From the IMG/VR virus record IMGVR_UViG_3300042402_002641, positions 124,001 through 188,000 of that record: DNA of 64,000 bases. One strand, written 5' to 3'. The notes below the pieces were generated by a model. The model was given only the letters and a program-made list of their open reading frames with translations, ran no database searches and was not told the origin of the DNA. The translations under genes and the position numbers were made by a program. Positions within the stretch are counted from its first letter, which is position 1, and the number at the start of each line of letters is the position of its first letter. Below, one piece after another: positions 11,804 through 43,002 of the stretch.

Positions 11804-11836
11804 ACTCTTATTTATTGCAGCGGTAAATATATGACT

Positions 11837-14766: not shown

Positions 14767-14780
14767 CGCTAAGTACACAG

Positions 14781-15414: not shown

Positions 15415-15425
15415 AACTATCTCAA

Positions 15426-17270: not shown

Positions 17271-17362
17271 AGGTATAGTATTTATGCTCTAGTTTAAACA
17301 AGTTTCCAGAAATTTAAGTTGATTCGTTCGCTGCTGCTAAGTAGTTTAAAATAGAGGTTATT

Positions 17363-17941
17363 ATGGGTCGATACAGTGATTATATGCGTGACATTTGGGC
17401 TATTCAGGCCAACAGAAAAGTCTTAGGAATTACGTTGTTTGGAGTATTTTTTGATAATTCCAAACCGTTCACTCCTGGTGATCAGCTTCAACTAGCAGAT
17501 GGTGTAGAAACTGCTGTGCAACTATTGTCTCAAAAAGGATATGATTTATTGATTATTTCCGGACAGCCATCAAAGAAAACCAAAAATTTATCTATACAGG
17601 ATTTTGAAAACATATTGTCTGCTACCAGAGAAGGTGTAGAACGATTAGGAGGCAGAATAAAAAATGCATACTACGCACCCGGAACAGATAAAAATGATCC
17701 GTATGTTAAGCCCAATGCAGGCATGTTCGAAAAAGCACAAAATGAAGGTATGGTAGATTGGTCTAAATCTTATTACGTTGGGTTCGAAGCTAACGATATA
17801 AAGGCCGCAGTAAAAGTAAAGGCCTTACCAGTGCTTATAAAACCTGCCAACAGTGAAGTAAATGTAAAGGCCTTGGCGTTGACACATCACCTTAAAATTC
17901 AAGAATTTCCTAGCCTGTTGGAATTTGCTCAAAGCCTTTAA
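17363..17941 (+). CDS. GmhB/HisB-like HAD-fold protein, catalytic aspartates missing
   Basis: L.DGV..AV..L...GY.L.IISGQ...YYAP...KPNAGMF...SYYVG...DIKAA aligns by eye to GmhB. Confidence 0.7.
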   Translation: MGRYSDYMRDIWAIQANRKVLGITLFGVFFDNSKPFTPGDQLQLADGVETAVQLLSQKGYDLLIISGQPSKKTKNLSIQDFENILSATREGVERLGGRIKNAYYAPGTDKNDPYVKPNAGMFEKAQNEGMVDWSKSYYVGFEANDIKAAVKVKALPVLIKPANSEVNVKALALTHHLKIQEFPSLLEFAQSL

Positions 17942-17982
17942 TCATTATAATTGATTAAGAATAGTATCTAATACCGAAAGTA

Positions 17983-18636
17983 TTATGGTCTATTAAGAGT
18001 CACATCTAATCCGGTACAGCTTACTTCGTCGGGGTCAAGACTCAACGGCGATGTGTAGAAAGAATTAAACGCCAAACTTTTTCTAATCTTTTCACCCTCA
18101 TTTGGAGTTACCCAATGGTGCAACCAGCTCGGAAATATAACAAGGTCGTATTGTTTAGGAGTTATAAAAATTTGAGGAGTATTGAAAAAATTAATCTCAC
18201 CTCTGTGTTGTATAGTACCCTTTTGACGATTGTCTTCAAGAACTACATCGCCAGTAACACCTTCAGGAATACTTAGATAGAAAGTTCCGCTTAATACGGT
18301 GTTGTAATGATTATGCATATGATGCCCAGTGCCAGGTGGATTAAAATTCACCCAGCTTTGAGTAATTGCTAACGTATTATCATAAACACCGAAAATATCT
18401 TTAGCATATTGATTTAAATGCTGCTCTATGACCTGTGTGAGTTTAGAATTTTTGTATTTTTTAGTCAATACAAGTTTATCCGGAGTCATCCAGTTTCCAG
18501 CTTTGTTAGCAATTAAATCTTTAGAAGAGAAATACTCTTTATTGTATTCCCCGATCATTTCCTCGATTTCGTTAACGTCAATTAACTCTTCTAAGTTTAC
18601 CTGAATGTAGGTAAGTGGAAAAATGTGATTATACAA
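17983..18636 (-). CDS. 2OG-Fe(II) oxygenase (TIGR02466-like)
   Basis: SWVN...HMHNH...LSGTFYL...IFPSWLHH.V...RKSLAFN. Confidence 0.85.
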   Translation of the reverse strand: MYNHIFPLTYIQVNLEELIDVNEIEEMIGEYNKEYFSSKDLIANKAGNWMTPDKLVLTKKYKNSKLTQVIEQHLNQYAKDIFGVYDNTLAITQSWVNFNPPGTGHHMHNHYNTVLSGTFYLSIPEGVTGDVVLEDNRQKGTIQHRGEINFFNTPQIFITPKQYDLVIFPSWLHHWVTPNEGEKIRKSLAFNSFYTSPLSLDPDEVSCTGLDVTLNRP

Positions 18637-18637
18637 G

Positions 18638-20332
18638 TTATTCCTTGGTTAATAGTTTACCAATTTCAGGCAACCACAAATACTTCATGTCTGATCGCTT
18701 TAAGGTATCTAGTGCTTCTACGAGTTTTTCAACTAGTGGATCCCCTGCAAGATTGAAACTGGTATTGAATAAAATTGGAACTCCTTTAATTTTATCAAAT
18801 TCTGAAATCAATTCGTAGTAGTGTTTATTTTGTTCGGCAGTTACTGTTTGAACTCTGCATGTTCCGTCAACGTGTGTAATTGCTGGAATTAAATCTCTCT
18901 TGTTTTCCAACACATCAACTGCGTACATCATAAAAGGTGTCTCGTCTTTTGTTCTTAGATCGAACCATTCGCCGGCTTTTTCTGCAAGACAGGAACCAGC
19001 AAACGGCCTAAACCATTCACGTTTTTTAATAATGTTAACAATATCTTTTCCGTCTTTGACAGTTGGGTCAAATAATATGCTTCTATTTCCCAGTGCTCTA
19101 GGACCAGCTTCACTTCGTCCTTGAAATAACGTGACTATGTTACCTTCAGCAATTAATTTTGCTACATCAGCAGCACTTGTGTCCACTACGGTAAAGCCAC
19201 TGAAATCTGCATTTTCATAATCAGCTGATCTATCGGGACCTAGATATAAACTTGTTAAAGGTGTTTTGGTTGTATTTTCTGATATCAGTCTGTAAATGTA
19301 TTGACAGGCCCCCATAACATTGCCGCCGTCGTGGCTCACTGGTTCGTGATAAAATTCAATGTTTGGAAATTCTTTTAAAAGTTCGTAATTTGCTACACAA
19401 TTAAGCCAATAGCCTCCAGCCATGACAATTTTTTTCATGCCGGTAAGTTCTATGGTTTTTCTTATTAAATCAAATACTCGTTGCTCGGAAGATTTTTGTA
19501 CAGCATAGGCAAGATCTTTTCTATAATCTCCAACTAGTTCAGGATCATCGTGCCAAGATATATTTCCATTAAGTGCTGTTAGTTCGGCATCAAGATCGCA
19601 CCTTACGTGATTTCCCGCTGGAAAATTAGGCTTGATAAAACTTCTATTATTAAATCTACCATCGTGGATTTTTATGTTTGGATTAGGCTTCCCGTAAGGA
19701 GCCAGTCCCATAGTTTTACCTGCCTCAATGGCGTGGAATCCTAAAAATTGTGTAACAGCTTCATAACTTTTTACTATACCGTGCATGTCAGAGATTTCAA
19801 TATCTATACTGTCATTTTCTTTCAATGTAAAACTATCAATTAAATTAGTGCCATAATTTTTATAGTGGCACTGGAATTCTGCAGGATAATTTAGAGTCCA
19901 AATCGACTCGACCTCCCATGTTTGGTGCATGAGTTCTTCACTTAGTCTACACCCGCTGCCTGCACCATCAATGATTAGTCCTGCTGCTTCATCAAATCCG
20001 CTGTTATAAAAAGCAGTGAAAGCATGTGTGAGATGATGATCATCACCTAATTTAATTGTTTCAACCTTTACATTGGGTTGCATTTTCCTAATAAAACAGG
20101 TGTAAGCATCCTCGCCAGTCCACGGAACTTGACCAAATGCGTTTCTTGTACCGCAGATGACAAGATAATCTATATGATCTGTATAATCGTAGGCCAGTAA
20201 CATGCCTGCAAACGGGTTGCCATCATATTTGAGTCTTGATAATCTATCTTCCTCGATATAGAAAATTAATTCGGTATCTTTATACAGAGCCGTAGCACCG
20301 TTGTGTCCAACATTTATACCCAACATCCACAT
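18638..20332 (-). CDS. Carbamoyltransferase (NodU/CmcH/TobZ family)
   Basis: Kae1-like HHLTHA, GKTMGLAPYG, LNCVAN; YrdC-like GRSEAGPRALGNRS, REWFRPFA, HVDGTCRVQTV, NTSFN. Confidence 0.93.
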   Translation of the reverse strand: MWMLGINVGHNGATALYKDTELIFYIEEDRLSRLKYDGNPFAGMLLAYDYTDHIDYLVICGTRNAFGQVPWTGEDAYTCFIRKMQPNVKVETIKLGDDHHLTHAFTAFYNSGFDEAAGLIIDGAGSGCRLSEELMHQTWEVESIWTLNYPAEFQCHYKNYGTNLIDSFTLKENDSIDIEISDMHGIVKSYEAVTQFLGFHAIEAGKTMGLAPYGKPNPNIKIHDGRFNNRSFIKPNFPAGNHVRCDLDAELTALNGNISWHDDPELVGDYRKDLAYAVQKSSEQRVFDLIRKTIELTGMKKIVMAGGYWLNCVANYELLKEFPNIEFYHEPVSHDGGNVMGACQYIYRLISENTTKTPLTSLYLGPDRSADYENADFSGFTVVDTSAADVAKLIAEGNIVTLFQGRSEAGPRALGNRSILFDPTVKDGKDIVNIIKKREWFRPFAGSCLAEKAGEWFDLRTKDETPFMMYAVDVLENKRDLIPAITHVDGTCRVQTVTAEQNKHYYELISEFDKIKGVPILFNTSFNLAGDPLVEKLVEALDTLKRSDMKYLWLPEIGKLLTKE

Positions 20333-20335
20333 AAT

Positions 20336-21265
20336 TTATCCTTTGTCTAGAGTTTTTTTCATATGTTTTTTTATTCCAGCAATTATATCTTTCAATTCGT
20401 CTTTTGAAAAATTCATCAACATATCATTTAATCTGTCAGCTTCTTCTGATCCAAAACCTGCAATTCTTATCGGACTATACACCCGTTTAGCATCTTTCTT
20501 TTCCACAATATTAAAATGTTCTGGGTACGTGGTGTTTATAGGAAAAGTGGATCCGCAGATCACAGTACCTGGTTTATTAAATGAATAAGCAATATGCTGT
20601 CCGACGCTGTCACACCCGATAAAATAATCAGCTGCTTCAATAACTGCTGCCCAAACACGCAAAGGCATCTGTTCGTTTGGTTGGAAAATAGGTAAATTTA
20701 CCACTTCCAATTTATGTTCGCCCATGTAAACAATATTGTATTCTTTGCTTAATTCAGCTATTAGATCCATGAAAGTTGTTTGTTCAATACTTCTTGAACT
20801 GCCATCATATACAATACCAGAAGACATCGAACTACTCCGTCCAAACGGTTGTATTACTATCGTTTTTTCTTTTTGATGTTGTTTTCTTACTTGAGTTAGC
20901 ACGTCTACTGCTACCATTTCCTCGTGCTTACTTAACACAATCAATGGTTTTTTGTTAATCGACGTTCTTTCGCCTAGAATTTCAAACCAAAAACTCTGTT
21001 GTAGGCTGCTTTTTTGATTGTAATATTCGTGATCTCTATATGGCTCGGTCGACATACAGATATTATCCTTGATCAAAGAATCAAATAATCCTTTGTGATT
21101 AACATCCCATGCTTTATTCTGTAGTGTAGGGTGTCCAAGATAAAACTCCATTCCGCCCTCACACACTATGCCTGCGAGCTCTCCACGCTTTTCACTTTCC
21201 TCGAGCGCAGGGATACTTGCTATCACTCTTCCTGCGCCGCCGTTTATAAAAAATATTTTTTTCAT
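20336..21265 (-). CDS. Glycosyltransferase family 9-like (heptosyltransferase-like)
   Basis: IVIQPFG; AVIEAADYFIGCDSVGQHIAYSFNKPGTVICGST resembles the GT9 DSG..H.A.A...P motif. Confidence 0.7.
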   Translation of the reverse strand: MKKIFFINGGAGRVIASIPALEESEKRGELAGIVCEGGMEFYLGHPTLQNKAWDVNHKGLFDSLIKDNICMSTEPYRDHEYYNQKSSLQQSFWFEILGERTSINKKPLIVLSKHEEMVAVDVLTQVRKQHQKEKTIVIQPFGRSSSMSSGIVYDGSSRSIEQTTFMDLIAELSKEYNIVYMGEHKLEVVNLPIFQPNEQMPLRVWAAVIEAADYFIGCDSVGQHIAYSFNKPGTVICGSTFPINTTYPEHFNIVEKKDAKRVYSPIRIAGFGSEEADRLNDMLMNFSKDELKDIIAGIKKHMKKTLDKG

Positions 21266-21302
21266 GTCATCCCTTATCGTGCCAAGTATTTATATGCTAG
21301 TA

Positions 21303-22079
21303 TTATACCATTAATTTTTTTTCATTGATATATTGTATTAAAATATCGGCATACTCTCTGTGCACCTGGTGATGAAAATGGTTTTTTTGTCGGATTAGAT
21401 GTGGATATTTTTTAGTTCCCCACGAATAGAAACTTTCTCCCCAATCAAAACATACCGTTGGATCAATACTAAAATCAATCGATTGGTTAGTTGTCAGACA
21501 GCAATTAACAAATAGATGTTTGAATCCTTTCATTTTAAGATAATTGTGAAGAGCAATTACCAAGGCTGAGAGTTGTTGTATCTGCAGTTGATCATCCCAA
21601 AAATACATAGCACAAAATTCTGTTATCTGATCAGATAGGTTAATGTGTTTAGTATAGTTATTTTTACTCACTACTATATCGTGAGATTGATTTGGATTAA
21701 TAAAGAAGGTTCCAAAATCATGATACTCCTGATCATGTTGATGTACCGAAATTGTGTTTTGCTGCTTTAATAAATGTTGAAACAGAGGTTGTGCAACTAT
21801 TTCTTTTCTGAATAATGATGTCCATCCGACTAACACAAATATGTCTTCTGCTCTAGACGTTTTTAAAAATTCTTCTAGATCAAAAATAGTCCTACGGAAA
21901 ATAAATTCATTTGTAGCTGCATTGTAAGCATTGTTGGTATAGTCAAGATCAAACGCTGTCGCGATATGATTTGCAAATGAATATTTTTTATTGTCAGGAT
22001 GCCTGCTGTCGTCTTCAATGGCTTCCATTCCAAACACAAATGAATCACCGTTGGCATACAATCTTTTTGGTTGTGTCAT
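21303..22079 (-). CDS. SGNH/GDSL-like hypothetical protein
   Basis: LYANGDSFVFG block-I-like motif, N.A..AATN block, C-terminal NHF. Confidence 0.55.
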   Translation of the reverse strand: MTQPKRLYANGDSFVFGMEAIEDDSRHPDNKKYSFANHIATAFDLDYTNNAYNAATNEFIFRRTIFDLEEFLKTSRAEDIFVLVGWTSLFRKEIVAQPLFQHLLKQQNTISVHQHDQEYHDFGTFFINPNQSHDIVVSKNNYTKHINLSDQITEFCAMYFWDDQLQIQQLSALVIALHNYLKMKGFKHLFVNCCLTTNQSIDFSIDPTVCFDWGESFYSWGTKKYPHLIRQKNHFHHQVHREYADILIQYINEKKLMV

Positions 22080-22654
22080 GAAAAATCTATGTTAAGAACC
22101 GCTCTCACACTTGATTTTGTAGGCGGCTGCCCTGAGTGATATTGGTCGCCTGAAAATAAAACATAGCGTCCTTGTTTTGGTTCAATAGATTGAACTATAT
22201 TCCATTTTGTAGATTGTTTTTCAAATAGAAAGGTATTACCGTCGCTGTCGAAAGGGTAATATATCAAAACATTGTGCATGATATCTAAATCCACATGCGG
22301 TGTTAAATAATTTGTCTCGGGATAACTGTCTGTTTTTTCTTGTAGATTCAATTTCATTCTATGAATATTTTTGCAGGTGAACTTTGTTATCATCAGAAAC
22401 TTTCGTAAAACATGCGATAGTTCGTAAGAAAATCGATTACAAACTTCATTGTTTTCTATTATCATGGCAGACAATTGTGGATATTCTTGACAATTTTTAT
22501 CTTGGTTGTCTTCTTGTAATTCCGGTCCTACAGAATAATCACACGACAGGTATTTTAATTTTTTTGAATTAATTATATCTTGAATCGCTATTTGTTCTTC
22601 AACAGTAAGTATGTCGTCATAAATGTTACAATAATCAGTTTTTTGTACTTTCAT
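22076..22654 (-). CDS. 2OG-Fe(II) oxygenase
   Basis: PHVD...VLIYY...GNTFLF...EPKQGR.VLF.G..YHSG...VRAVLN. Confidence 0.8.
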   Translation of the reverse strand: MKVQKTDYCNIYDDILTVEEQIAIQDIINSKKLKYLSCDYSVGPELQEDNQDKNCQEYPQLSAMIIENNEVCNRFSYELSHVLRKFLMITKFTCKNIHRMKLNLQEKTDSYPETNYLTPHVDLDIMHNVLIYYPFDSDGNTFLFEKQSTKWNIVQSIEPKQGRYVLFSGDQYHSGQPPTKSSVRAVLNIDFS

Positions 22655-23652: not shown

Positions 23653-23656
23653 AATA

Positions 23657-25252: not shown

Positions 25253-25262
25253 TTGTGTGTCC

Positions 25263-25826
25263 TTATATATTAAACGAAAATGCCTTGCGTGGCTCATCGT
25301 TTGATTTTTGAAATACTTCGTGCTCTACCCAGTTGTCCCACATTAGCAATAACCCTGTTCTAGGAGGAATAATAACTTGGCTCTGTAATTGGTTAGTGTC
25401 AAATTTTGTGAAGGGCCTTGGATCGTGTATGACCAAAGGCGGAACGTCCTGCCCTGCATCTAAATAAAATGTTCCGCTAAACGTACATTCTTGATGTGCA
25501 TGTTTTCTTAAAAATGCATGCTTGTGCATTGAACTAAAAAATCCATAGGGTTTAAACATTGACTTTTCATACTCAACACCCTTGGTTTCTATTAGAGGCT
25601 TTGCATAATTTTCTAACAGATAGTCAAAAAACTCTAATACTTCTAATTCCGAATTCACTAATACATTAAACTTTTCGTTGGCCAAGGTCGATGGATAGTT
25701 TTCTGTACCTAGTAATCCGCTGTCTGTTAAGCTGGTATACTTGTTACAAAGAGGCAACAACTTTTCTGCAAACTCTACGTTAACATCTGATAATACTCGT
25801 GTAGGAAAAAAATTGTTTATCTTCAT
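25263..25826 (-). CDS. 2OG-Fe(II) oxygenase (TIGR02466-like)
   Basis: KHAH...FSGTFYL...DPRP...GLLLMWDNWVEHEV...RKAFSFN; ATGA overlap gives the start at 25826. Confidence 0.85.
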   Translation of the reverse strand: MKINNFFPTRVLSDVNVEFAEKLLPLCNKYTSLTDSGLLGTENYPSTLANEKFNVLVNSELEVLEFFDYLLENYAKPLIETKGVEYEKSMFKPYGFFSSMHKHAFLRKHAHQECTFSGTFYLDAGQDVPPLVIHDPRPFTKFDTNQLQSQVIIPPRTGLLLMWDNWVEHEVFQKSNDEPRKAFSFNI

Positions 25827-26416
25827 ACTATTACTGGCAAACATCCTATATTAACTCCTGGCGCTATATTCGTCTCTAAATCTAGTCCAAGAGTAACTCG
25901 TTTTTCAGAATAGTCTTTTAGATTTTTTACATAGTGTTTTCTTCTTCCTGGTCCTAGATAAATCTGCCCTACTTTGTTGACTATTTTGTATCTTACTATA
26001 TCGTATTCATCAACAAAAACTGTTTCGGTGAATCTGGGTTCTATAGCAACATATCCGTGTGCCATGACTTCGTGATCGTGCAATTTTAGAACTTCTGTAT
26101 GATCATGATAATTTAACCAATTTCGCATCCACAGATTAAATGTAGGGACATTATATTTTTTACAATATAACGATATACATTCATTTAGATCTTTGTAAAT
26201 TTGAAAATATGCAGGACTACCCGATGCATAAACAAATGCATTATATTTTTTGTATAGCCATGTAACATTGGGTGTCTCAGATTCTAGTCTATGTTGCAGT
26301 GTTTTTGCTATTATGTCTGTTTGATATAAAATTGAATCTATGTTATCTTCTATATACTTTGATTTAAAAAGCATATATGTAAAATCTTCATTGTTTTCCA
26401 AAAGTTCAATAGCCAT
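25823..26416 (-). CDS. Probable 2OG-Fe(II) oxygenase-like protein
   Basis: NWLN...LHDH...HGYV...G.IYL.PG..KHYV...KRVTLGLD. Confidence 0.65.
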   Translation of the reverse strand: MAIELLENNEDFTYMLFKSKYIEDNIDSILYQTDIIAKTLQHRLESETPNVTWLYKKYNAFVYASGSPAYFQIYKDLNECISLYCKKYNVPTFNLWMRNWLNYHDHTEVLKLHDHEVMAHGYVAIEPRFTETVFVDEYDIVRYKIVNKVGQIYLGPGRRKHYVKNLKDYSEKRVTLGLDLETNIAPGVNIGCLPVIV

Positions 26417-27122
26417 TTTTCAATGTATTCATGTATTGTGTCGCATATACCATCGCAGTGTGTTTTCCATAATGATGCCCGTCTCTTGCTTTATCAACAA
26501 CATCTATGTTTGGAAAAAATAAAATACGATCTTCATCTAACTTATCGTATATGATATAGTTATTATCTATTTTGTTAAATTCGGGAATAAATGAATGTAC
26601 GATTCTAGTATTTGCTTTATTAGACTCAACTGCCATGATATTCTTAAAAAAATTTCCAATGTCGTCAGAATCGTGTGGATCATGATGCATTAATCTTTGT
26701 TCGTCTGACAACAGTTGGTTGTTATTTTCACGACGATGCAAATAACTCCATTGTATAAAAATAGTCTTTGGTGCTGCGTTTTTTAAAATATAGCAGACCT
26801 TTCTGGAAATCCAATCATTGCTGGCTCCGTTTAAACTAATATTAATAATATTGTCTTTGGTTAATGTTGATAATTGTTGATGCCAGGTATGTTCAAATGG
26901 TTGTCCTAGTCCTACTGTAAAACTATCACCTACACACCAAATAGCATTATTGATATCGTTGGGCCATTCATTATCTCGAAAACCTCGGCTGTTAAAAAAA
27001 TAATATATTCTGTAAGGATAATTGGCAAAATATTCTTTATCTAGACATTGTTCATAGCTGTCTATTCCTAATTCTATTAGGCATTGATTAGCTGAAGTTG
27101 TCAAGAGCAGATCATTCAACAT
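26406..27122 (-). CDS. SGNH/GDSL-like hypothetical protein
   Basis: WCVGDSFTVGLG, NISLNGASN, C-terminal D..H (RDGHH). Confidence 0.6.
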   Translation of the reverse strand: MLNDLLLTTSANQCLIELGIDSYEQCLDKEYFANYPYRIYYFFNSRGFRDNEWPNDINNAIWCVGDSFTVGLGQPFEHTWHQQLSTLTKDNIINISLNGASNDWISRKVCYILKNAAPKTIFIQWSYLHRRENNNQLLSDEQRLMHHDPHDSDDIGNFFKNIMAVESNKANTRIVHSFIPEFNKIDNNYIIYDKLDEDRILFFPNIDVVDKARDGHHYGKHTAMVYATQYMNTLKNGY

Positions 27123-27124
27123 TG

Positions 27125-28270
27125 CTAATTGCTCGATGTGAAGTTGCTGTACCAGTCTTTGACTTCGCTAAATGCTTCTTGTGCAAGATTCTGCATATCT
27201 ACACACTGGTCTTCTTTTTGATTTTTCTTACACCACTTGTTAAATACTTCAACACATTCCGAAAAGTTTTTAATCAACAGTGCCTTTTCTGCTAGGGTCT
27301 GTAATTTAATAGGCATCTTAGAAGTAATAATTCTATCTGTTTCTAGACTATCGATCTTATAGTAAACGTCGGAATATTTTTCAATATTATTTCTAAGAAA
27401 GTTCTGATTTTCTAAACTTAACGAACTTCTTGTTAGCAATGCCGGCAGTGGTGTGTGATTGTTCAGTAGTTCGTCTTGTGTCGGTGACGGCAATGCTGCT
27501 AATTGGTTTTCTGAGTTTGCCAACAAAGGAACTTTATTCGAAAGTCCGCTCATATCACTGATCAGATAGTGGCAACTATTCCATTCTTTCCACGAAATTC
27601 CAAATACATCTTTCCATGATTTAGCAGTTTCTCCTGGTGGAAAAATGTTTAGTCTAGAAACAAACTGATCAATGTTTGGCATGTCTTTTTCATAATTGAA
27701 ATAGCTACTAACATTAAAATGGTCTGACACCCATTTCAAGTATTCAACATATCTATCAAGATAGTTTGTCATGGCTTCGGGGTCAACATGTATTCCACGT
27801 TTATATACATCGCTGAATACGTGTATTTTTTCTTCGTGTGTAAACACATTAAGATGCTTTGATTCGTTTACAATGCACCAACTAATGCCGTGTTCAAATA
27901 AATTTTTACGTCTAGCACTTATAATATAAAAATTTTCATTTAGATATTTGTAAAAACTTAATTTGTCAGTTAAATTGTCTTCTCTGTTGTTCAAATGATA
28001 CAGAGCTAATCTACTGGTTTTATAATGATCTGCATTTTTTAGATTATCTACAATCTCTGATAACGGCTGCCAATATCCCCATTGAGATTTTTCTGGCTTT
28101 CCCAGGACCTGCATTTGCAATTTTTCATTGTAGTAACTGATTATGCCATTTGTCAGTTCATGCAGATTGATAACAGGTTTACCATAATCGTAGGCCTGCA
28201 TGATAATTGTTAAATATCTTTGAAGAAAAGTAGATCCTACTCGATCTGGTGTTAAAATAAGTATGTTCAT
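27125..28270 (-). CDS. Sulfotransferase-like protein (P-loop PAPS-binding type)
   Basis: ILILTPDRVGSTFL resembles the 5'-PSB loop; RRKNLFEHGISW resembles the 3'-PB motif of Stf0-like enzymes. Confidence 0.55.
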   Translation of the reverse strand: MNILILTPDRVGSTFLQRYLTIIMQAYDYGKPVINLHELTNGIISYYNEKLQMQVLGKPEKSQWGYWQPLSEIVDNLKNADHYKTSRLALYHLNNREDNLTDKLSFYKYLNENFYIISARRKNLFEHGISWCIVNESKHLNVFTHEEKIHVFSDVYKRGIHVDPEAMTNYLDRYVEYLKWVSDHFNVSSYFNYEKDMPNIDQFVSRLNIFPPGETAKSWKDVFGISWKEWNSCHYLISDMSGLSNKVPLLANSENQLAALPSPTQDELLNNHTPLPALLTRSSLSLENQNFLRNNIEKYSDVYYKIDSLETDRIITSKMPIKLQTLAEKALLIKNFSECVEVFNKWCKKNQKEDQCVDMQNLAQEAFSEVKDWYSNFTSSN

Positions 28271-29046
28271 AGTTTTGGTTGCAGTGCTCTATATTGAAAA
28301 ATGTAACCTGTAAGGTCATTGCGTAAATTTTCTTCTAGTGATATTTCTAAAAACTTACATATTTCTGCTAACAAATAGTCAGCTGGATCGTTTATGTATT
28401 CATTATAAAAAATTTCTAGAATTCTTTTATCAAATTCGGGAGAGTTTTCAACAGTCTTATTCAATTTTGTAATAAATTTTGATGTCCATTCGAATTCGTC
28501 AAAATGATCTTTTAAATTTTGTATTTTAACTTTGGCGTTTTTAATTTCTGTCTCAGATAACCCGTTGTCTCTGCAAAAAGTTTCGAAATTTATTTCTGTT
28601 GTTGACAAAATTTTGAACAAGTAGTTAAATCTGCAAAGTTTTTTTTGATCGTCTGTAATATTAATTTGTACACATTTTGAATTTGGAAAAGCTTCTAAAA
28701 ATATATTAATATTTCTACAATGAATTGATATTACCTGGGGTACTGAATCTTTGGCTAACGGTGAGATCAACAAATTATCACGAAGATATGCTAAACGTTG
28801 TTGTTGAGAAAAATTTTCGTAATTGTTATCTTCAATAATGTCGGTGCCTTCCTTGCTGCCTAGAAAATCTTTATAGAAATTGTTTATGTATTGTATGGCT
28901 CTATTGCTATGTCCGGATCCCCTGTTATCAAATTCAAATGATTCACTTTGATCATAGGCAAAATATATGAGAGAAGCTAAAAACCAGCCTCCGGCTCCGA
29001 TTGGATAATGAACAAACACTATAGGAGCATCTTTTAGATATTTCAT
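28267..29046 (-). CDS. Hypothetical protein, possible sulfotransferase-like fold
   Basis: VFVHYPIGAGGWFL Gly-loop near the N-terminus; TAAATA-N5-ATG gives the start at 29046. Confidence 0.5.
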   Translation of the reverse strand: MKYLKDAPIVFVHYPIGAGGWFLASLIYFAYDQSESFEFDNRGSGHSNRAIQYINNFYKDFLGSKEGTDIIEDNNYENFSQQQRLAYLRDNLLISPLAKDSVPQVISIHCRNINIFLEAFPNSKCVQINITDDQKKLCRFNYLFKILSTTEINFETFCRDNGLSETEIKNAKVKIQNLKDHFDEFEWTSKFITKLNKTVENSPEFDKRILEIFYNEYINDPADYLLAEICKFLEISLEENLRNDLTGYIFQYRALQPKL

Positions 29047-29051
29047 GCTTG

Positions 29052-29097
29052 TATTTACTTTCATAAATTAACCATGCAATTTTAAATTATGTAAATA
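29052..29097. promoter_or_regulatory. Back-to-back divergent TAAATA promoters
   Basis: GTATTTAC (29051-29058) and GTAAATAC (29091-29098); each TAAATA lies exactly 5 nt from its ATG (29046 minus, 29103 plus). Confidence 0.75.
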
Positions 29098-29102
29098 CTC
29101 GT

Positions 29103-29657
29103 ATGATCTCACACATACAGATTTATGAAAATGCAGTACCTGCAACGTTTTGTGAACATTTAATAGGTTTATTTGATAAAAATGCAAAAGACATCATACA
29201 TGCACCTGCTTGGATGGATCATATCGGTATGTATGCCACTCCAGCAAAATATCCAGGGCAGGCAATGTCGTATGATTGGAAAAATGAAGTCAAAATTTTA
29301 GATGGTATTCTAGCTCCGATTATTGAAGATTATCGGAATAGAGTAGATGTTCTAAGTATGCTTCCAAAGAAATGTGGCCAGGAAGCGTATAGAATTAAAC
29401 GTTACAGAAAAAACGAACAAGAATTCAGGCTTCACGTCGATTGTTCTACCTATACCAACAGCAGTAGATTTTTGGCTGTTTTAATTTATCTTAATGATTC
29501 GGAAGCGGGCACTGAATTTCCCTTACAGGACATATCTATAACTGCCAAGCAGGGCAGCATCGTGGTTTTTCCTCCTTGTTGGCCATGGCCGCATCGAGGA
29601 TTGCGCCCCTCAATCGCAGATAAGTTTATTGTAAGCACCTATTACACCTACATCTAA
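29103..29657 (+). CDS. 2OG-Fe(II) oxygenase, prolyl-4-hydroxylase-like
   Basis: LHVD...RFLAVLIYLND...GTEF...KQGSIVVFP..W.WPHRG. Confidence 0.88.
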   Translation: MISHIQIYENAVPATFCEHLIGLFDKNAKDIIHAPAWMDHIGMYATPAKYPGQAMSYDWKNEVKILDGILAPIIEDYRNRVDVLSMLPKKCGQEAYRIKRYRKNEQEFRLHVDCSTYTNSSRFLAVLIYLNDSEAGTEFPLQDISITAKQGSIVVFPPCWPWPHRGLRPSIADKFIVSTYYTYI

Positions 29658-29660
29658 TAT

Positions 29661-30284
29661 ATGAAACGAATACTTAATTTATTTTCAGTTCCGATATTAG
29701 AAACAATTATAACAGATGTTGACAATCTCAACAAGGATTTGATAAGTTCAATTGACGCACTGTTTGCGTTAGATGATTCAAAAAGAATTTTGAGTCACAT
29801 GTGGAAAAATAATTTACAAACCAATGTAAAAAGCGAACTAGGCTACAGTTCATTCAATCAACATGACATCCTACAGCGTACAGAGTTTGACAGTTTATTT
29901 AATTTACTTACTCCTACAATAAATGGTTTTTTCACACAATTAAATTTTCCTGGCACTTGGCAGTGGGAAAATGCTTGGTGCAATGTTTATCCGCTTGATG
30001 CTTACGTGCCGTTACACGATCATAGAGGTGTTCATTGGAGCGGAGTATACTACGTGCAGGCTGAAACCGCGTGTGGAGATCTTTTATTGGTAGATCCTAA
30101 AGAATATGCATTGGCGAATGAACCTGATAATACCTTATATCGTGGTAATAAGATAACCAATTTTGTTCCGCAGCCTGGAAAATTGATTATGTTTCCCGGA
30201 TATTTAAAACATGAGTCAGAACCTAATCAATCCGATAAGGATCGAATTATAATTAGTTTCAATATAAATTGCCATGCAGACTAA
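29661..30284 (+). CDS. 2OG-Fe(II) oxygenase (TIGR02466-like)
   Basis: AWCN...LHDH...WSGVYYV...DP...PGKLIMFPGYLKHES...RIIISFN. Confidence 0.88.
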   Translation: MKRILNLFSVPILETIITDVDNLNKDLISSIDALFALDDSKRILSHMWKNNLQTNVKSELGYSSFNQHDILQRTEFDSLFNLLTPTINGFFTQLNFPGTWQWENAWCNVYPLDAYVPLHDHRGVHWSGVYYVQAETACGDLLLVDPKEYALANEPDNTLYRGNKITNFVPQPGKLIMFPGYLKHESEPNQSDKDRIIISFNINCHAD

Positions 30285-30858
30285 CGACATACACTTCTTT
30301 ACTGACAATCCGTATCTCCTTGTCACTAAAATAAATATCGTAGAAACACAAAGAAGACGGATGATCGATTGTGTACTATCTCAAAAAGATATAGCCAAGT
30401 ATCACGGAGGTTACACTTTTGAAATTATGGATCCGTATAATGACTTTGCAGAATTGTATAATATCTTCGTAGAATTAGCAAGACAGGTCTTTGAGAATTT
30501 TAGATTTAGTGTAAAACAAAAGAATTGGTGTTGGGCAAATGTATATAACTCCAGTAACAACAAGACTAATATGCATAACCATGTCAATACTTCAACTATC
30601 AATGGTGTGTTTTATCTGCATGTTCCAACTTTACCCGACGGCGAAGGTGGTCTTCAAATTACTAACAACGGTGTTGTTGATACATTTTATCCCGAAACTG
30701 GTGACTTATTGATTATGCCGTCGTGGATGCTGCATCAACCATGTGATCATAGTTCGGAAGAATATCGTATTTCAATTAACATGGAAATTAACACAATAGA
30801 ATCTGTAGATAATTTATATCTGTTAGATAAAATTCATAAAAACTGTACTCATGCATGA
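30274..30858 (+). CDS. 2OG-Fe(II) oxygenase
   Basis: WAN...MHNH...INGVFYL...GDLLIMPSWMLHQP...RISIN. Confidence 0.82.
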   Translation: MQTNDIHFFTDNPYLLVTKINIVETQRRRMIDCVLSQKDIAKYHGGYTFEIMDPYNDFAELYNIFVELARQVFENFRFSVKQKNWCWANVYNSSNNKTNMHNHVNTSTINGVFYLHVPTLPDGEGGLQITNNGVVDTFYPETGDLLIMPSWMLHQPCDHSSEEYRISINMEINTIESVDNLYLLDKIHKNCTHA

Positions 30859-31342
30859 TTCCTACAGTGTAATTTCAAAATCCTTTTTGACCTCGGATCA
30901 GTGTGACGAAATTATTGCTAACCATGATTGCAATTTAGAGCATGTAGAACAATCAATAAACCGCAAAGTTAATATTAAAGAAATTGATTTGTGTAGTGTT
31001 CCCAATCTAGTTGAGTTACTCAATGATGCCAACAATAAAATATTTCGCATGGACACCAATGGAGAAACTGAATGTTATTTTGCTCGGTATGATCCTGGCA
31101 ATCACTATGATAAATTGCACATTGATAGTCTGTCTGCAGAAATTACAAGAAAAATTTCCTTTAGTATCTTTCTAAATGATGATTTTGAAGGCGGTAATTT
31201 TGAAATGCTAGGTGAAAGTCTTGATATAAGAAAAGGAAAACTTTGTGTTTTCCCTTCCTTTTTACCTCACAGGGTAACCGCAGTTACTGCCGGCACCAGG
31301 TACGTTATTTTTGGATTCTTGTTAGGCCCCAGACTGAAATAA
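30851..31342 (+). CDS. 2OG-Fe(II) oxygenase (PKHD/P4H-like)
   Basis: LHID...RKISFSIFLNDDFEGGNFE...FPSFLPHRVTAVTAGTRY. Confidence 0.88.
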   Translation: MHDSYSVISKSFLTSDQCDEIIANHDCNLEHVEQSINRKVNIKEIDLCSVPNLVELLNDANNKIFRMDTNGETECYFARYDPGNHYDKLHIDSLSAEITRKISFSIFLNDDFEGGNFEMLGESLDIRKGKLCVFPSFLPHRVTAVTAGTRYVIFGFLLGPRLK

Positions 31343-31822: not shown

Positions 31823-31837
31823 AATATTTTCCTTTTA

Positions 31838-33496: not shown

Positions 33497-33498
33497 GC

Positions 33499-42984: not shown

Positions 42985-43002
42985 TTTCTACTCCGTTATT
43001 AT

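What the first reader, a model, noticed from the sequence alone, without database searches (positions are those of the whole stretch)
17363..31342. 14-kb multi-enzyme tailoring island inside the tail-fibre module: candidate virion-decoration system
Seen: about 17 contiguous modifying-enzyme genes: ~8 2OG-Fe(II) oxygenases, carbamoyltransferase, GT9-like GT, flavin halogenase, LLM monooxygenase, 2 sulfotransferase-like, 2 SGNH-like and an inactive-looking GmhB. They are visibly AT-richer than the structural genes (line 28381 is 16/60 GC). The island sits between a collagen/cupredoxin fibre gene and the Cys/Gly-rich pair, and is driven by TAARTA motifs (17338, 21287, 29052, 29092) like those of structural genes. 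Established: 2OG oxygenases and PrnA-like genes are common singly in aquatic T4-like phages, and some phages glycosylate virion proteins. Inference: late expression, fibre-module location and no scaffold synthase suggest the substrate is a virion protein or attached glycan, receiving hydroxyl, carbamoyl, sulfate, acyl and halide groups. The whole set resembles a Nod-factor/O-antigen-like tailoring pathway.
Basis: partly seen in the sequence, partly recalled or inferred. Interest (0 to 1): 0.88.

Follow-up and report, generated by a model that had tools for sequence, protein, structure and literature searches.

The report
Enzyme island in cyanophage tail-fibre cluster
An uncultured T4-like cyanophage carries 17 late-expressed modifying-enzyme genes inside its tail-fibre region; this kind of island is already known in relatives, its target is still untested, and neighbouring cysteine/glycine-rich fibre-module proteins are the leading candidate.

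Summary
Window 17363-31342 contains 17 tightly packed enzyme genes. GC is 35.3% against 44.1% for the rest of the window. All 17 are under strong purifying selection (dN/dS 0.02-0.23).

The enzymes are:
- eight dioxygenase-like proteins
- a NodU/TobZ-type O-carbamoyltransferase
- a GT9-like glycosyltransferase
- a VirX1-type halogenase
- an MsnO8-family LLM oxidoreductase
- two sulfotransferase-fold proteins
- two GDS-motif SGNH-like proteins
- a GmhB-like HAD protein that lacks the catalytic aspartates

T4-type late-promoter motifs precede each sub-operon and are conserved in diverged relatives.

The island is not a new kind of thing. It lies in the known hypervariable "host recognition cluster" of cyanomyoviruses. 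It joins the Syn9-type dioxygenase/halogenase array with the P-SSM2-type GT9-like/carbamoyltransferase "LPS" module.

Three points are new:
- the sulfotransferase-fold families are absent from all deposited phage genomes
- an eight-gene core order is conserved among uncultured relatives
- GT9-like plus carbamoyltransferase nearly always sits downstream of Cys/Gly-rich fibre-module paralogs

Virion decoration is the best single reading (about 0.4) but is unproven. Host envelope-glycan remodelling and small-molecule tailoring remain open.

The parts
17363..17941 (+). HAD-IIIA / GmhB-like protein lacking the catalytic aspartates (probable pseudo-phosphatase). It is always found convergent to the carbamoyltransferase in this lineage.
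   Evidence: NCBIfam GmhB model 59 bits (cut-off 178); HAD-IIIA 47.9 bits (cut-off 44.6). The sequence reads ITLFGVFFDN and VGFEAND where DxD and GDxxxD are expected. dN/dS is 0.02-0.03. Homologs follow the carbamoyltransferase gene in L016 and L025-L027.
17337..17344 (+). CTAAGTAG motif 18 nt upstream of the HAD-like gene; a possible variant of the late promoter.
   Evidence: Relatives carry CTAAATTA or ATAAATTA at the same distance, followed by a GAGG Shine-Dalgarno sequence. Weaker than the other three sites.
17983..18636 (-). 2OG-Fe(II) oxygenase (PF13759). This copy varies among relatives: absent in L005 and only 81% identical in L007.
   Evidence: Pfam 78.5 bits. The best solved relatives are uncharacterised structural-genomics proteins 3BVC and 2RG4. 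Turnover among relatives.
18638..20332 (-). O-carbamoyltransferase (NodU/NolO/TobZ family).
   Evidence: Pfam Carbam_trans_C 204 bits plus Carbam_trans_N 72.7 bits. phrog_1601. PDB relatives NovN, GdmN and TobZ at E 1e-54 to 1e-42.
20336..21265 (-). GT9-like (heptosyltransferase-like) glycosyltransferase, T4-GC302 / phrog_8954 family.
   Evidence: phrog_8954 at E 3e-100. Weak GT9 and heptosyltransferase I/II/III hits on the GCDSVGQHIA motif region. More than 3663 homologs, many 72-89% identical. Always adjacent to the carbamoyltransferase in cyanophage-type loci.
21287..21294 (-). TATAAATA, a T4-type late promoter for the GT9-like / carbamoyltransferase / 2OG sub-operon.
   Evidence: Perfect match 21 nt upstream of the ATG. 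Conserved in L005, L007, L006, L016, L019 and L025-L027 while the spacer has diverged.
21303..22079 (-). DUF6071 / SGNH-like protein (GDSF motif).
   Evidence: Pfam DUF6071 23.8 bits (cut-off 27). GDSF at residues 11-14. Always lies upstream of the GT9-like gene in this lineage.
22076..22654 (-). 2OG-Fe(II) oxygenase (P4H-like, PF13640), paired with the LLM gene.
   Evidence: Pfam 26.9 bits (cut-off 27). HVD...H...R can be read in the sequence. Also adjacent to an LLM gene in L016.
22651..23652 (-). Luciferase-like monooxygenase, MsnO8 / 'group 1' family.
   Evidence: TIGR03558 342.5 bits (cut-off 167). No PHROG hit. No cyanophage hit among deposited phage records. Absent from L019 and L025-L027.
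23657..25297 (-). Flavin-dependent halogenase of the VirX1 type.
   Evidence: Pfam Trp_halogenase 343 bits. VirX1 (6QGM) at E 1e-169 over the full length. GGGSSG, WVWNTP, the Lys in ATYKNSIRF and the Glu in FIEPLES are all present.
25263..25844 (-). 2OG-Fe(II) oxygenase (PF13759). Absent in L005.
   Evidence: Pfam 52.3 bits. Presence and absence among relatives.
25823..26416 (-). Divergent dioxygenase-like protein (Syn9 gp47 / S-CREM1_74 family, phrog_2696), partner of the halogenase.
   Evidence: phrog_2696 at E 7e-32. hhalign against the 2OG_5 paralogs: probability 73%, E 3e-5, with invariant H113, H115, H161 and R173. Lies directly upstream of the halogenase in L006 and L019.
26406..27122 (-). 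SGNH/GDSL-like protein (GDSF ... DGHH).
   Evidence: NCBIfam GDSL_LA_2490 at E 2e-4. Motifs read from the sequence. Weak similarity to the protein at 21303. Stays paired with the sulfotransferase-fold gene even in distant phage types.
27125..28270 (-). Sulfotransferase-fold protein (Stf0-like) of a large uncharacterised phage family.
   Evidence: More than 1118 homologs, none with a Pfam domain. AlphaFold2 pLDDT 88. Foldseek top hits are Stf0 (E 5e-4, probability 1.0) and other sulfotransferases. TPDRVGS is invariant. No hit in 50,697 phage records. Distant homologs lie near APS kinase and a Sulfotransfer_3 gene.
28267..29046 (-). Second sulfotransferase-fold protein. The start is revised to the second ATG.
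   Evidence: AlphaFold2 pLDDT 92.8. The top 50 Foldseek hits are almost all PAPS sulfotransferases (CurM ST, TPST1/2, SULTs, Teg12, StaL). Homologs are 259-262 aa. No hit in deposited phages.
29051..29058 (-). GTAAATAC late-promoter-like motif 4 nt before the ATG at 29046; it heads the nine-gene minus-strand operon.
   Evidence: Same geometry as at structural genes 3379(-), 5782(-) and 11815(-). P about 2e-7 for eight such cases. Conserved in L019 and L025.
29091..29098 (+). GTAAATAC late-promoter-like motif 4 nt before the ATG at 29103; it heads the four-gene plus-strand dioxygenase operon.
   Evidence: Conserved as ATAAATAG-N4-ATG in L019 and ATAAGTAT-N4-ATG in L025.
29103..31342 (+). Four tandem 2OG-Fe(II) oxygenases (29103-29657 PF13640; 29661-30284 PF13759; 30274-30858 PF13759; 30851-31342 PF13640).
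   Evidence: Pfam 37.5, 72.5, 38.4 and 47.4 bits. The copy at 30274 is absent in L007. dN/dS is 0.05-0.10.
31322..35091 (-). Context and candidate substrates: a 166-aa protein and two paralogous Cys/Gly-rich proteins (552 and 530 aa; 8% Cys, 18-19% Gly).
   Evidence: Composition. phrog_4474 and phrog_863 ('tail fiber assembly'). Cys/Gly-rich paralogs lie upstream of GT9-like/carbamoyltransferase in 10 of 10 and 7 of 8 loci, and in 0 of 4 loci that lack that pair.
35449..48489 (-). Context: two giant fibre genes (2511 aa with five CBM_5_12 repeats; 1828 aa tail fibre).
   Evidence: Pfam. phrog_9851 tail fibre at E 8e-154.
15426..17270 (-). Context: fibre / baseplate-connector protein on the other flank, with its own ATAAATAC promoter.
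   Evidence: phrog_677. Promoter motif at 17279-17285. Six GXY triplets and a Cys-x2-His-x2-Met motif. The distal part is swapped in L004, L005 and L007.

Best explanation
This is the enzyme-rich part of the 'host recognition cluster' of an uncultured T4-like cyanomyovirus. The cluster is the hypervariable block of tail-fibre genes between the baseplate/fibre genes and the gp13-gp15 neck and sheath genes.

Shown:
- There are 17 real genes, and they are under strong selective constraint.
- All 17 proteins are predicted to be soluble.
- The genes are arranged in three or four sub-operons, each preceded by a T4-type late-promoter motif.
- The genes fall into conserved modules:
  (A) DUF6071/SGNH + GT9-like glycosyltransferase + O-carbamoyltransferase + catalytically dead GmhB-like HAD
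  (B) gp47-like dioxygenase + VirX1-type halogenase
  (C) two sulfotransferase-fold proteins + SGNH
  (D) LLM + 2OG oxygenase
  (E) loose 2OG oxygenases that are gained and lost singly

Inferred:
- The enzymes are made late, in the cytoplasm, at the same time as the fibre proteins.
- Module A transfers a heptose-type sugar from a nucleotide sugar to an acceptor and O-carbamoylates it.
- The SGNH proteins add or remove an acyl group.
- Modules B to E hydroxylate, halogenate and sulfate the same or a neighbouring target.
- The most likely acceptor is a phage structural protein encoded next door. The best candidates are the Cys/Gly-rich paralogs that accompany GT9-like/carbamoyltransferase in nearly every locus examined. 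The finished fibre tips would then carry a small tailored glycan or modified side chains that affect folding, stability or receptor binding.
For: - Real and constrained: dN/dS is 0.02-0.23 for every gene against relatives that are 93-97% identical in nucleotide sequence.
- Late promoters: a perfect TATAAATA upstream of the GT9-like gene is conserved in seven relatives with diverged spacers. NTAAATAN-N4-ATG occurs at both divergent island operon starts, exactly as at structural genes, with P about 2e-7. Sigma-70-like sites are not enriched.
- No transmembrane segment or signal peptide is predicted.
- Conserved order: ST-like, ST-like, SGNH, gp47-like, halogenase, DUF6071, GT9-like, carbamoyltransferase in L019, which is 45-83% identical in protein sequence. 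The subset DUF6071, GT9-like, carbamoyltransferase, HAD recurs in L016 and L025-L027.
- Fibre genes lie on both sides of the GT9-like/carbamoyltransferase pair in S-CAM1, S-CAM3 and P-SSM2, and between the fibres and gp13 in S-SSM7.
- Those marine phages add a PfkB kinase, a cytidylyltransferase-like protein, an intact small HAD, a cupin and an epimerase. Together these would make up a nucleotide-heptose pathway.
- Cys/Gly-rich paralogs lie upstream on the same strand in 10 of 10 loci with enough sequence, and in 7 of 8 further environmental loci. They are absent from 4 of 4 loci that lack GT9-like/carbamoyltransferase.
- A distant GT9-like homolog in N4-like Vibrio phages sits between a tail-fibre gene and a tail gene, with no LPS genes nearby.
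- Precedent in the literature: bacterial operons that combine 2OG oxygenases and sulfotransferases with tail-collar or collagen-like proteins, where those proteins were predicted to be the substrates (PMC2938197).
Against: - No modified virion protein has been observed in any cyanophage. A literature search found none.
- Synteny among T4-like cyanophages is largely inherited, so the co-occurrence counts are not independent events.
- The adjacent fibre gene swaps its distal part while the island stays put.
- The sulfotransferase-fold/SGNH pair occurs in a different phage type beside lysis-like genes, APS kinase and TctC, not beside fibres.
- Relatives carry TctA/TctC transporter genes inside the island, which points to small-molecule traffic.
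- GT9 membership of the window protein is below threshold, and profile searches found no solved heptosyltransferase.
- The window holds no source of nucleotide-heptose or PAPS.
- Collagen-like sequence is too short to need many hydroxylases.
- Known GT9 enzymes mostly act on lipid A-core, which would fit a host target.
Confidence: 0.4

Rival explanations
1. Late remodelling of a host envelope glycan (LPS core, O-chain or exopolysaccharide). The GT9-like enzyme and the carbamoyltransferase act on a lipid-linked host glycan at the inner face of the membrane, and other enzymes tailor it further. The phage receptor on infected cells and debris is thereby masked. This blocks superinfection or stops progeny being lost to dead cells. 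The genes travel with the fibre genes because receptor and receptor-binder co-evolve.
For: - This is the published reading for these clusters: the P-SSM2, S-SM2 and S-SSM7 'LPS genes' (PMC3037559) and the glycosyltransferases of the host recognition cluster (PMC7029224).
- The only HMM hits of the GT family are to LPS heptosyltransferases I, II and III.
- Marine relatives carry a nucleotide-heptose pathway next door.
- NodU/TobZ-type enzymes carbamoylate sugar hydroxyls.
- Late timing suits protection of progeny.
Against: - No island protein has a membrane segment or signal peptide.
- No flippase, polymerase or ligase gene is present.
- This reading does not explain the strict pairing with Cys/Gly-rich fibre-module proteins.
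- It does not explain the lone GT9-like gene between the tail genes of N4-like vibriophages.
- It gives no obvious role to eight dioxygenases and a halogenase.
- A change made late in a lytic cycle has little time to reach the outer membrane.
Confidence: 0.25
2. Tailoring of a small molecule or short peptide. The halogenase, dioxygenases, LLM, sulfotransferases and carbamoyltransferase would modify a host metabolite or imported compound into a halogenated, hydroxylated and sulfated product, for example an allelochemical, a signal or a cofactor analogue.
For: - Iyer et al. proposed organohalogen or peptide secondary metabolism for the Syn9 array. They also found bacterial neighbourhoods that combine the same dioxygenase families with halogenases, TonB receptors, sulfotransferases and NRPS (PMC2938197).
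- VirX1 halogenates diverse small aromatic compounds (PMC6875430 as cited in PMC10452541).
- All solved relatives of the carbamoyltransferase act on antibiotics.
- MsnO8-family LLMs are natural-product enzymes.
- TctA/TctC transporter genes and APS kinase occur in relatives' islands.
Against: - No scaffold synthase or precursor-peptide gene is present, and there is no intergenic room for one.
- Late-promoter control and the position inside the fibre module are unusual for metabolic genes.
- A lytic phage gains little from a metabolite made minutes before lysis.
- The pairing with Cys/Gly-rich proteins is left unexplained.
Confidence: 0.17
3. There is no common substrate. The locus is a hyperplastic landing pad where unrelated auxiliary genes pile up. 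Individual 2OG oxygenases would serve other ends, such as drawing down 2-oxoglutarate or tuning NtcA, hydroxylating host translation factors, or repairing alkylated DNA. The late motifs would simply come with the neighbourhood.
For: - Single 2OG genes come and go among phages that are 93-97% identical in nucleotide sequence (17983, 25263, 30274).
- LLM + 2OG is an insertion relative to L019.
- The region is known to be hypervariable (PMC7029224).
- 2OG drawdown and DNA-repair roles have been proposed (PMC3037559).
- S-SCSM1 scatters 24 such genes across its genome (PMC9602691).
Against: - The eight-gene core keeps its order at 45-83% protein identity.
- The pairs GT9-like/carbamoyltransferase, ST-like/SGNH and halogenase/gp47-like persist across distant lineages.
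- Every gene has a low dN/dS, which rules out 'stuffer DNA'.
- PF13759 and PF13640 are not the AlkB or TET/JBP families.
- DNA modification would be expected early, near the replication genes.
Confidence: 0.18

Closest known systems
Syn9-type tandem dioxygenase + tryptophan-halogenase array of cyanomyoviruses (Syn9 gp41-gp54; S-CREM1 ORF69-80)
   Same: - A VirX1-type halogenase (50-55% identical) with a run of PF13759/PF13640 dioxygenases and a gp47-like protein.
- The array lies directly downstream of the tail-fibre genes and a roughly 165-aa protein.
- It was described as 'remarkable' and 'unprecedented' by Iyer et al. 2010 (PMC2938197).
   Different: - The window has no JmjC/MINA-type member (gp49-like) and no TPR fusion.
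- Its dioxygenases are split into two divergent operons and mixed with a glycosyltransferase, a carbamoyltransferase, sulfotransferase-fold proteins, SGNH proteins and an LLM. Syn9 and S-CREM1 lack all of these.
P-SSM2 / S-SSM7 / S-CAM1 / S-CAM3 'LPS' module (T4-GC302 hypothetical + T4-GC303 Nol-like carbamoyltransferase + heptose genes)
   Same: - The same GT9-like and carbamoyltransferase pair (39-51% identical).
- The same position inside the fibre module.
- The same upstream Cys/Gly-rich paralogs.
   Different: - The window lacks the PfkB kinase, cytidylyltransferase-like protein, small intact HAD, cupin and epimerase.
- It has instead a catalytically dead GmhB-like HAD and a DUF6071 SGNH protein.
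Host recognition cluster (HRC) of pelagi- and cyanomyophages (Zaragoza-Solas et al. 2020, PMC7029224)
   Same: A large non-syntenic island within the structural region that carries fibre genes together with LPS-type and other auxiliary genes. It is bounded by the gp13-gp15 side of the neck and sheath module.
   Different: The HRC is a description of a region, not a mechanism. The enzyme set here (halogenase, sulfotransferase-fold proteins, LLM, eight dioxygenases) was not part of that description.
Nod-factor tailoring enzymes of rhizobia (NodU/NolO carbamoyl, NodH sulfate, NodL acetyl)
   Same: The same chemistry on offer: carbamoyl, sulfate and acyl groups placed on a sugar hydroxyl. The carbamoyltransferase is a true family member.
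   Different: - There are no NodA, NodB or NodC homologs to build the backbone.
- The sulfotransferase-fold proteins are not NodH-like by sequence.
- The acyl enzymes are SGNH proteins, not NodL-type.
- The resemblance is functional only.
Bacterial operons combining 2OG oxygenases and sulfotransferases with phage tail-collar or collagen-like proteins (Iyer et al. 2010, PMC2938197)
   Same: Dioxygenases and sulfotransferases encoded next to a fibre-like structural protein that is predicted to be hydroxylated and then sulfated.
   Different: - Those operons use beta-hydroxylase and PhyH families and often include PAPS synthetase.
- Here the families are PF13759 and PF13640.
- No PAPS genes are in the window.
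- No tail-collar domain was detected.
VirX1 (Syn10 flavin-dependent halogenase, PDB 6QGM)
   Same: A full-length match at E 1e-169 with about 50% identity, and all catalytic motifs present.
   Different: The natural substrate of VirX1 is itself unknown. The window enzyme is a distinct orthologue whose closest cultured relative is in S-CREM1 (55% identical).

Membership tests
Cyanomyovirus host recognition cluster / hyperplastic fibre-module island | Lies within the structural region between the tail-fibre genes and the gp13-gp15 neck and sheath genes | tested here: met
   Fibres at 35449-48489; a gp15-like gene at 13228-14766; the sheath gene at 6485-9985. Same layout in L025-L027 and S-SSM7.
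Cyanomyovirus host recognition cluster / hyperplastic fibre-module island | Gene content differs among close relatives while the flanks are conserved | tested here: met
   Three 2OG genes are present or absent among phages 93-97% identical in nucleotide sequence. The LLM, halogenase and ST-like genes are present or absent among more distant relatives.
Syn9-type dioxygenase/halogenase array | Tandem 2OG-Fe(II) dioxygenases of several families plus a tryptophan-halogenase-type enzyme | tested here: met
Syn9-type dioxygenase/halogenase array | A JmjC/MINA-clade member (gp49-like) within the array | tested here: not met
   No JmjC or Cupin_4/8 hit in any of the 17 proteins.
P-SSM2-type 'LPS' module | T4-GC302 (GT9-like) adjacent to T4-GC303 (Nol-like carbamoyltransferase) | tested here: met
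P-SSM2-type 'LPS' module | Adjacent nucleotide-heptose synthesis genes (kinase, nucleotidyltransferase, phosphatase, epimerase) | tested here: not met
   None in the window island. Only a GmhB-like HAD without catalytic aspartates. The rest of the 280-kb genome could not be read.
Glycosyltransferase family 9 (heptosyltransferases) | Pfam PF01075 at or above the gathering score | tested here: inconclusive
   Window protein 16.6 bits against a cut-off of 22. Homologs: Vibrio phage 25.4, S-CAM1 22.0, S-CAM3 17.4, P-SSM2 15.4, all on model positions 172-225.
Glycosyltransferase family 9 (heptosyltransferases) | C-terminal nucleotide-sugar motif (D-S-G-x-x-H-hydrophobic-A) and GT-B fold | tested here: inconclusive
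   The motif GCDSVGQHIA is invariant in six diverse members. The consensus it is compared with is recalled from memory. Profile searches against PDB sequences found no heptosyltransferase.
Glycosyltransferase family 9 (heptosyltransferases) | Uses ADP-heptose as donor | not testable with these tools
   Supported only by context: heptose-pathway genes next door in marine relatives and a GmhB-like partner here.
NodU/TobZ O-carbamoyltransferases | N-terminal Kae1/ASKHA-like domain plus C-terminal YrdC-like domain, both Pfam domains above threshold | tested here: met
   72.7 and 204 bits. TobZ, NovN and GdmN at E 1e-42 to 1e-54.
Flavin-dependent (tryptophan-type) halogenases | GxGxxG, WxWxIP-type motif, catalytic Lys and Glu | tested here: met
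   GGGSSG, WVWNTP (Thr in place of Ile), K in ATYKNSIRF and E in FIEPLES. Pfam 343 bits. The motif definitions are recalled from the PrnA/RebH literature.
PAPS-dependent sulfotransferases | Sulfotransferase fold | tested here: met
   Foldseek on confident models. For 27125, the top six hits are sulfotransferases (best E 5e-4). For 28267, the top 50 hits are almost all sulfotransferases (best E 3e-4). TM scores are only 0.3-0.5.
PAPS-dependent sulfotransferases | Sequence membership (Pfam Sulfotransfer_1/2/3) and the 5'-PSB and 3'-PB motifs | tested here: inconclusive
   No Pfam or NCBIfam hit. An invariant TPDRVGS in the 27125 family resembles the 5'-PSB loop. The 28267 family has an invariant YPxGAGGWF instead. 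A profile against PDB gives SULT1C2 only at E 0.11.
PAPS-dependent sulfotransferases | A PAPS supply | tested here: not met
   No APS kinase or sulfate adenylyltransferase in the window. APS-kinase-like genes do neighbour distant homologs in L020 and L021. Supply from the host is possible but untested.
SGNH/GDSL hydrolases | Block I GDS(L/F) serine and block V DxxH | tested here: inconclusive
   The protein at 26406 has GDSF and DGHH. The protein at 21303 has GDSF but only NHFH near the C-terminus. HMM hits are below threshold.
HAD-IIIA GmhB (heptose 1,7-bisphosphate phosphatase) | Catalytic DxD nucleophile / general acid and the motif IV aspartates | tested here: not met
   ITLFGVFFDN and VGFEAND in the window protein, and the same in the L016 homolog. 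Score 59 bits against a cut-off of 178. The fold-level HAD-IIIA model is passed (47.9 against 44.6).
LLM class oxidoreductases, MsnO8 / group 1 | NCBIfam TIGR03558 above cut-off | tested here: met
   342.5 bits against 166.95.
Nod-factor / O-antigen biosynthetic pathway | Backbone synthase (NodC-type) or the Wzx/Wzy/WaaL machinery | tested here: not met
   None among the 17 proteins.
T4-type late promoter | TATAAATA-like element immediately upstream of late genes, conserved in position | tested here: met
   The consensus itself comes from established T4 and cyanomyovirus knowledge. Transcription was not measured.

The most novel reading that the evidence does not exclude
T4-like cyanophages, and N4-like vibriophages through the lone GT9-like gene, glycosylate their own receptor-binding fibre proteins in the cytoplasm with a heptose-type sugar. 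In this lineage the sugar is then carbamoylated, acylated and sulfated, and the protein is hydroxylated or halogenated. The Cys/Gly-rich paralogs would be the dedicated acceptors. This would be a multi-step, virus-encoded decoration pathway for host-recognition organelles. It would also give the first natural role to the hundreds of orphan 2OG oxygenases and VirX1-type halogenases in marine phage genomes.
Probability: 0.3. Interest if true: 0.85.

Novelty: new variant of a known kind. Interest (0 to 1): 0.55.

Why it matters
Dioxygenase, halogenase and 'LPS' genes are among the most common unexplained genes in ocean and lake cyanophages. Their purpose has been debated for twenty years. Proposals include stuffer DNA, control of 2-oxoglutarate, DNA repair, antibiotics and host surface change.

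This locus brings the two known module types together with newly recognised sulfotransferase-fold families. It shows that they are late-promoter-driven, tightly constrained and kept in a fixed order. It also points to one concrete candidate substrate, the Cys/Gly-rich fibre-module proteins, and that candidate can be tested in phages already in culture (S-CAM1, S-CAM3, P-SSM2, S-SSM7).

If fibres are chemically decorated, host-range prediction from fibre sequence alone would be incomplete.

Tried and rejected
- Megablast of the island and of window bases 1-20000 against 50,697 phage records found nothing. The phage is distant from all deposited genomes, so the comparison had to be done at the protein level.
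- Sequence searches against the PDB for the GT9-like protein (single sequence and six-member profile), for both sulfotransferase-fold families (single sequences and profiles) and for the C-terminus of the flanking fibre gave nothing significant.
- Rfam at gathering thresholds over the whole window found nothing.
- The sigma-70 and terminator scan showed no enrichment.
- The Syn9 infection transcriptome (Doron et al. 2016), which would give the expression class of gp41-gp54, is not held in the library. Expression timing therefore rests on promoter motifs alone.
- Prolyl hydroxylation of collagen as the job of the P4H-like oxygenases was rejected. There are only six GXY triplets here and in relatives.
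- Homology between the dead GmhB-like HAD and the small intact HAD (T4-GC306) of marine relatives was rejected.
- A search for cellular homologs of the GT9-like family in 185,579 species genomes returned only MAG contigs from unrelated taxa. These carry carbamoyltransferase, Cys/Gly-rich and giant ORFs, so they are almost certainly mis-binned phage DNA. No bacterial context is available.
- 'Stuffer DNA' was rejected on dN/dS.
- DNA hypermodification is judged unlikely. The promoter motifs are late, the 2OG families are neither AlkB nor TET/JBP, and the genes are not near the replication genes.

Full report
**What is there.** The window comes from a 280-kb IMG/VR contig (IMGVR_UViG_3300042402_002641). 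No deposited phage genome matches it at the DNA level. Its proteins place it among the T4-like cyanomyoviruses: the halogenase is 55% identical to that of Synechococcus phage S-CREM1 and 50% to those of Syn9 and Syn10. Positions 17363-31342 hold 17 ORFs with gaps of 41 nt or less. The flanks are structural genes. On one side lie the sheath gene, a gp15-like gene and a fibre/baseplate-connector protein. On the other lie a 166-aa protein, two Cys/Gly-rich paralogs, a 2511-aa fibre with CBM5/12 repeats and an 1828-aa tail fibre.

**Checking the inventory.**
- Seven ORFs are 2OG-Fe(II) oxygenases by Pfam (PF13759 or PF13640), one of them just under threshold.
- An eighth, at 25823, belongs to the Syn9 gp47 family. 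It aligns with the PF13759 paralogs at the profile level, sharing HxH...H...R.
- The carbamoyltransferase is unambiguous. Its solved relatives all O-carbamoylate hydroxyl groups of natural products.
- The halogenase is a full-length VirX1 relative with intact motifs.
- The LLM passes the MsnO8-family cut-off two-fold.
- The 'GT9-like' call is weak for the window protein (16.6 bits). The family as a whole, however, hits only heptosyltransferase models, always at the nucleotide-sugar motif, and two members reach the Pfam cut-off.
- The two 'sulfotransferase-like' proteins have no HMM hit. Alignments of their metagenomic homologs gave confident AlphaFold models (pLDDT 88 and 93). The structural neighbours of those models are sulfotransferases almost without exception, although TM scores are low.
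- Two proteins carry the GDSF serine motif of SGNH hydrolases, with weak DUF6071 and GDSL hits.
- The HAD-IIIA/GmhB-like protein has hydrophobic residues where the catalytic aspartates should be. A 58%-identical homolog shows the same replacements. Even so, it evolves under the strongest constraint of all (dN/dS 0.02-0.03).
- The drop in GC is real: 35.3% against 44.1%. It is significant at synonymous positions, though most of it comes from amino-acid composition.

**Expression signals.** ATAAATA occurs only 12 times in the window, fewer than the 18 expected by chance. Almost every copy sits just upstream of a gene start on the same strand.

A sharper pattern emerged. NTAAATAN followed by exactly four bases and an ATG heads eight long ORFs (expected 0.6; P about 2e-7). 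Five of these head structural or flanking genes outside the island. Two are the divergent starts of the island's nine-gene minus-strand operon and its four-gene plus-strand operon. This places the start of the first minus-strand gene at 29046, which fits the 259-262 aa length of its homologs. The same geometry is kept in relatives L019 and L025.

A perfect TATAAATA lies 21 nt upstream of the GT9-like gene. It is conserved in seven relatives whose spacers have diverged. The fourth site (17337, CTAAGTAG) is weaker, but relatives carry a conserved CTAAATTA at the same position. Sigma-70-like sites are not enriched.

That TATAAATA is the late promoter of T4-type phages is established knowledge, not something measured here. 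The one transcriptome paper that could confirm the timing in Syn9 is not held in the library.

**Relatives and modules.** Three contigs share the island at 93-97% nucleotide identity but differ by single dioxygenase genes. The gene at 17983 is absent or only 81% identical, 25263 is absent, and 30274 is absent. Every shared gene has a dN/dS of 0.02-0.23, so the island is not filler.

A 90-kb contig (L019, 45-83% protein identity) keeps the following order. First come the CBM fibre, the Cys/Gly pair and the 166-aa protein. Next are three convergent dioxygenases. Then follow ST-like, ST-like, SGNH, gp47-like, halogenase, DUF6071, GT9-like and carbamoyltransferase. The LLM + 2OG pair and the gene at 25263 are therefore insertions in the window lineage.

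Other relatives (L016, L025-L027) keep DUF6071, GT9-like, carbamoyltransferase and a convergent HAD-like gene, but lack the halogenase.

The 27125 family has more than 1100 metagenomic homologs and none in 50,697 deposited phage records. At 48% identity it turns up in a different phage type. There it is again paired with an SGNH gene, but it sits beside an APS-kinase-like gene, a Sulfotransfer_3-like gene and TctC, not beside fibres.

**Link to known cyanophage clusters.** In Syn9 and S-CREM1, halogenase(s) and eight to ten dioxygenases directly follow the fibre genes. Iyer et al. (PMC2938197) singled out this array and proposed organohalogen or peptide metabolism for it.

In P-SSM2, S-SSM7, S-CAM1 and S-CAM3 the GT9-like/carbamoyltransferase pair sits inside the fibre module. 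It is followed by a PfkB kinase, a cytidylyltransferase-like protein, a small HAD with an intact DxDGT motif, a cupin and an epimerase. That is a plausible nucleotide-heptose pathway. These are the 'LPS genes' of Sullivan et al. (PMC3037559), who left open whether they function at all. The region as a whole corresponds to the 'host recognition cluster' of Zaragoza-Solas et al. (PMC7029224), who favoured modification of the host O-chain. The island is therefore a new combination within a known kind of region.

**What the neighbourhood says about the target.** The GT9-like gene is adjacent to a carbamoyltransferase in every cyanophage-type locus examined. Two or three Cys/Gly-rich paralogs (8-12% Cys, 14-21% Gly) lie upstream on the same strand in:
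- 10 of 10 loci with enough sequence
- 7 of 8 further environmental loci
- none of the four loci that lack the pair

. These counts are not phylogenetically independent.

An independent data point comes from N4-like Vibrio phages. Their distant GT9-like homolog, the one with the best GT9 score, lies alone between a tail-fibre gene and a tail gene.

None of the 17 proteins has a predicted membrane segment or signal peptide, so the chemistry happens in the cytoplasm.

Against a tight link to fibres, the distal part of the neighbouring fibre gene is replaced in three near-identical phages without matching change in the island. The only difference is the dioxygenase nearest to that fibre gene. Collagen-like sequence is negligible.

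I take self-decoration of fibre-module proteins as the most likely single mechanism (0.4). On this reading a heptose-type glycosyl transfer and O-carbamoylation form the conserved core, and sulfation, halogenation, hydroxylation and acyl handling are lineage-specific additions.

The other readings remain open:
- late remodelling of a host envelope glycan (0.25)
- small-molecule or peptide tailoring (0.17)
- a mosaic of unrelated auxiliary genes with no common substrate (0.18)

The hypothesis can be tested directly in cultured phages that carry the core module.

Noticed in passing
window 1294(-), 3379(-), 5782(-), 10042(+), 11815(-), 29058(-), 29091(+), 54336(-): The late-promoter-like NTAAATAN sits exactly 4 nt before the ATG of eight long ORFs (expected 0.6). 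If transcription starts at the T4-typical distance, these late mRNAs would be leaderless or nearly so. The motif at 11815 also suggests that the ORF listed as 11045-11944 (GTG start) really begins at the ATG near 11803.
   Followed up: partly
window 15426-15830 (-), C-terminus of the 614-aa fibre/baseplate-connector protein; L016 12272-14380: A conserved GHPF ... Y-x-C-x2-H-x2-M pattern resembling a type-1 copper (cupredoxin) site. The L016 homolog carries two such domains. There is no Pfam or PDB sequence hit, so this rests on the motif alone.
   Followed up: partly
L016 5638-8719; L019 19146-20117; L020 14739-15722; L021 14746-15723: Relatives' islands encode parts of a tripartite tricarboxylate transporter (a full TctA in L016; TctC-like binding proteins elsewhere). 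In L020 and L021 there are also APS-kinase-like genes. Phage-borne uptake and PAPS-supply genes next to dioxygenases and sulfotransferase-like genes are unexplained.
   Followed up: no
L018 16030-16374, L017 22702-23037, L022 15924-16244, L023 15910-16233: The gene annotated 'phosphoheptose isomerase' in P-SSM2, S-SSM7, S-CAM3 and S-CAM1 is a HAD-type protein of about 110 aa with an intact DxDGT motif, not a SIS-type isomerase. The adjacent 'cysteine dioxygenase' is a small cupin with a weak lyxose-isomerase hit and may be the real isomerase.
   Followed up: partly
window 17363-17941 (+): A HAD-fold protein without catalytic aspartates has the lowest dN/dS in the island (0.02-0.03), and its position after the carbamoyltransferase is conserved. 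It is probably a non-catalytic binding or scaffolding partner.
   Followed up: partly
window 31838-35091 (-): Two paralogous proteins with 45-46 cysteines each and 18-19% glycine. They share an N-terminal 'TPGSYTFTVP.GV...GGGG' glycine-rich-domain-like start and a nearly identical C-terminal 40 residues. Shorter proteins of similar composition occur in marine cyanophages, but BLAST detects no similarity to them.
   Followed up: partly
window 15426-17270 (-) versus L004, L005, L007: Only the N-terminal 69-75 residues of this fibre protein are conserved among phages whose neighbouring genes are 93-97% identical. The distal part is replaced, and in L005 by a much longer protein. The nearest dioxygenase (17983) changes along with it: absent in L005 and 81% identical in L007.
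   Followed up: partly
L028-L038 (genome contigs): All 'cellular' hits to the GT9-like family are MAG contigs assigned to unrelated taxa (Neomarinimicrobiota, Methanobacteriota, Flavobacteriales and others). They carry the carbamoyltransferase, Cys/Gly-rich ORFs and giant ORFs, so they look like cyanophage DNA mis-binned into MAGs.
   Followed up: partly
whole window / contig of origin: The source contig is 280 kb, longer than any cultured cyanomyovirus among the hits (the largest is about 252 kb). Whether it is one genome or an assembly concatemer was not checked.
   Followed up: no
window 63576-63701 (-): A run of about 40 residues, almost entirely Gly/Ala, near the N-terminus of the 998-aa ORF at 60807-63803.
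   Followed up: no
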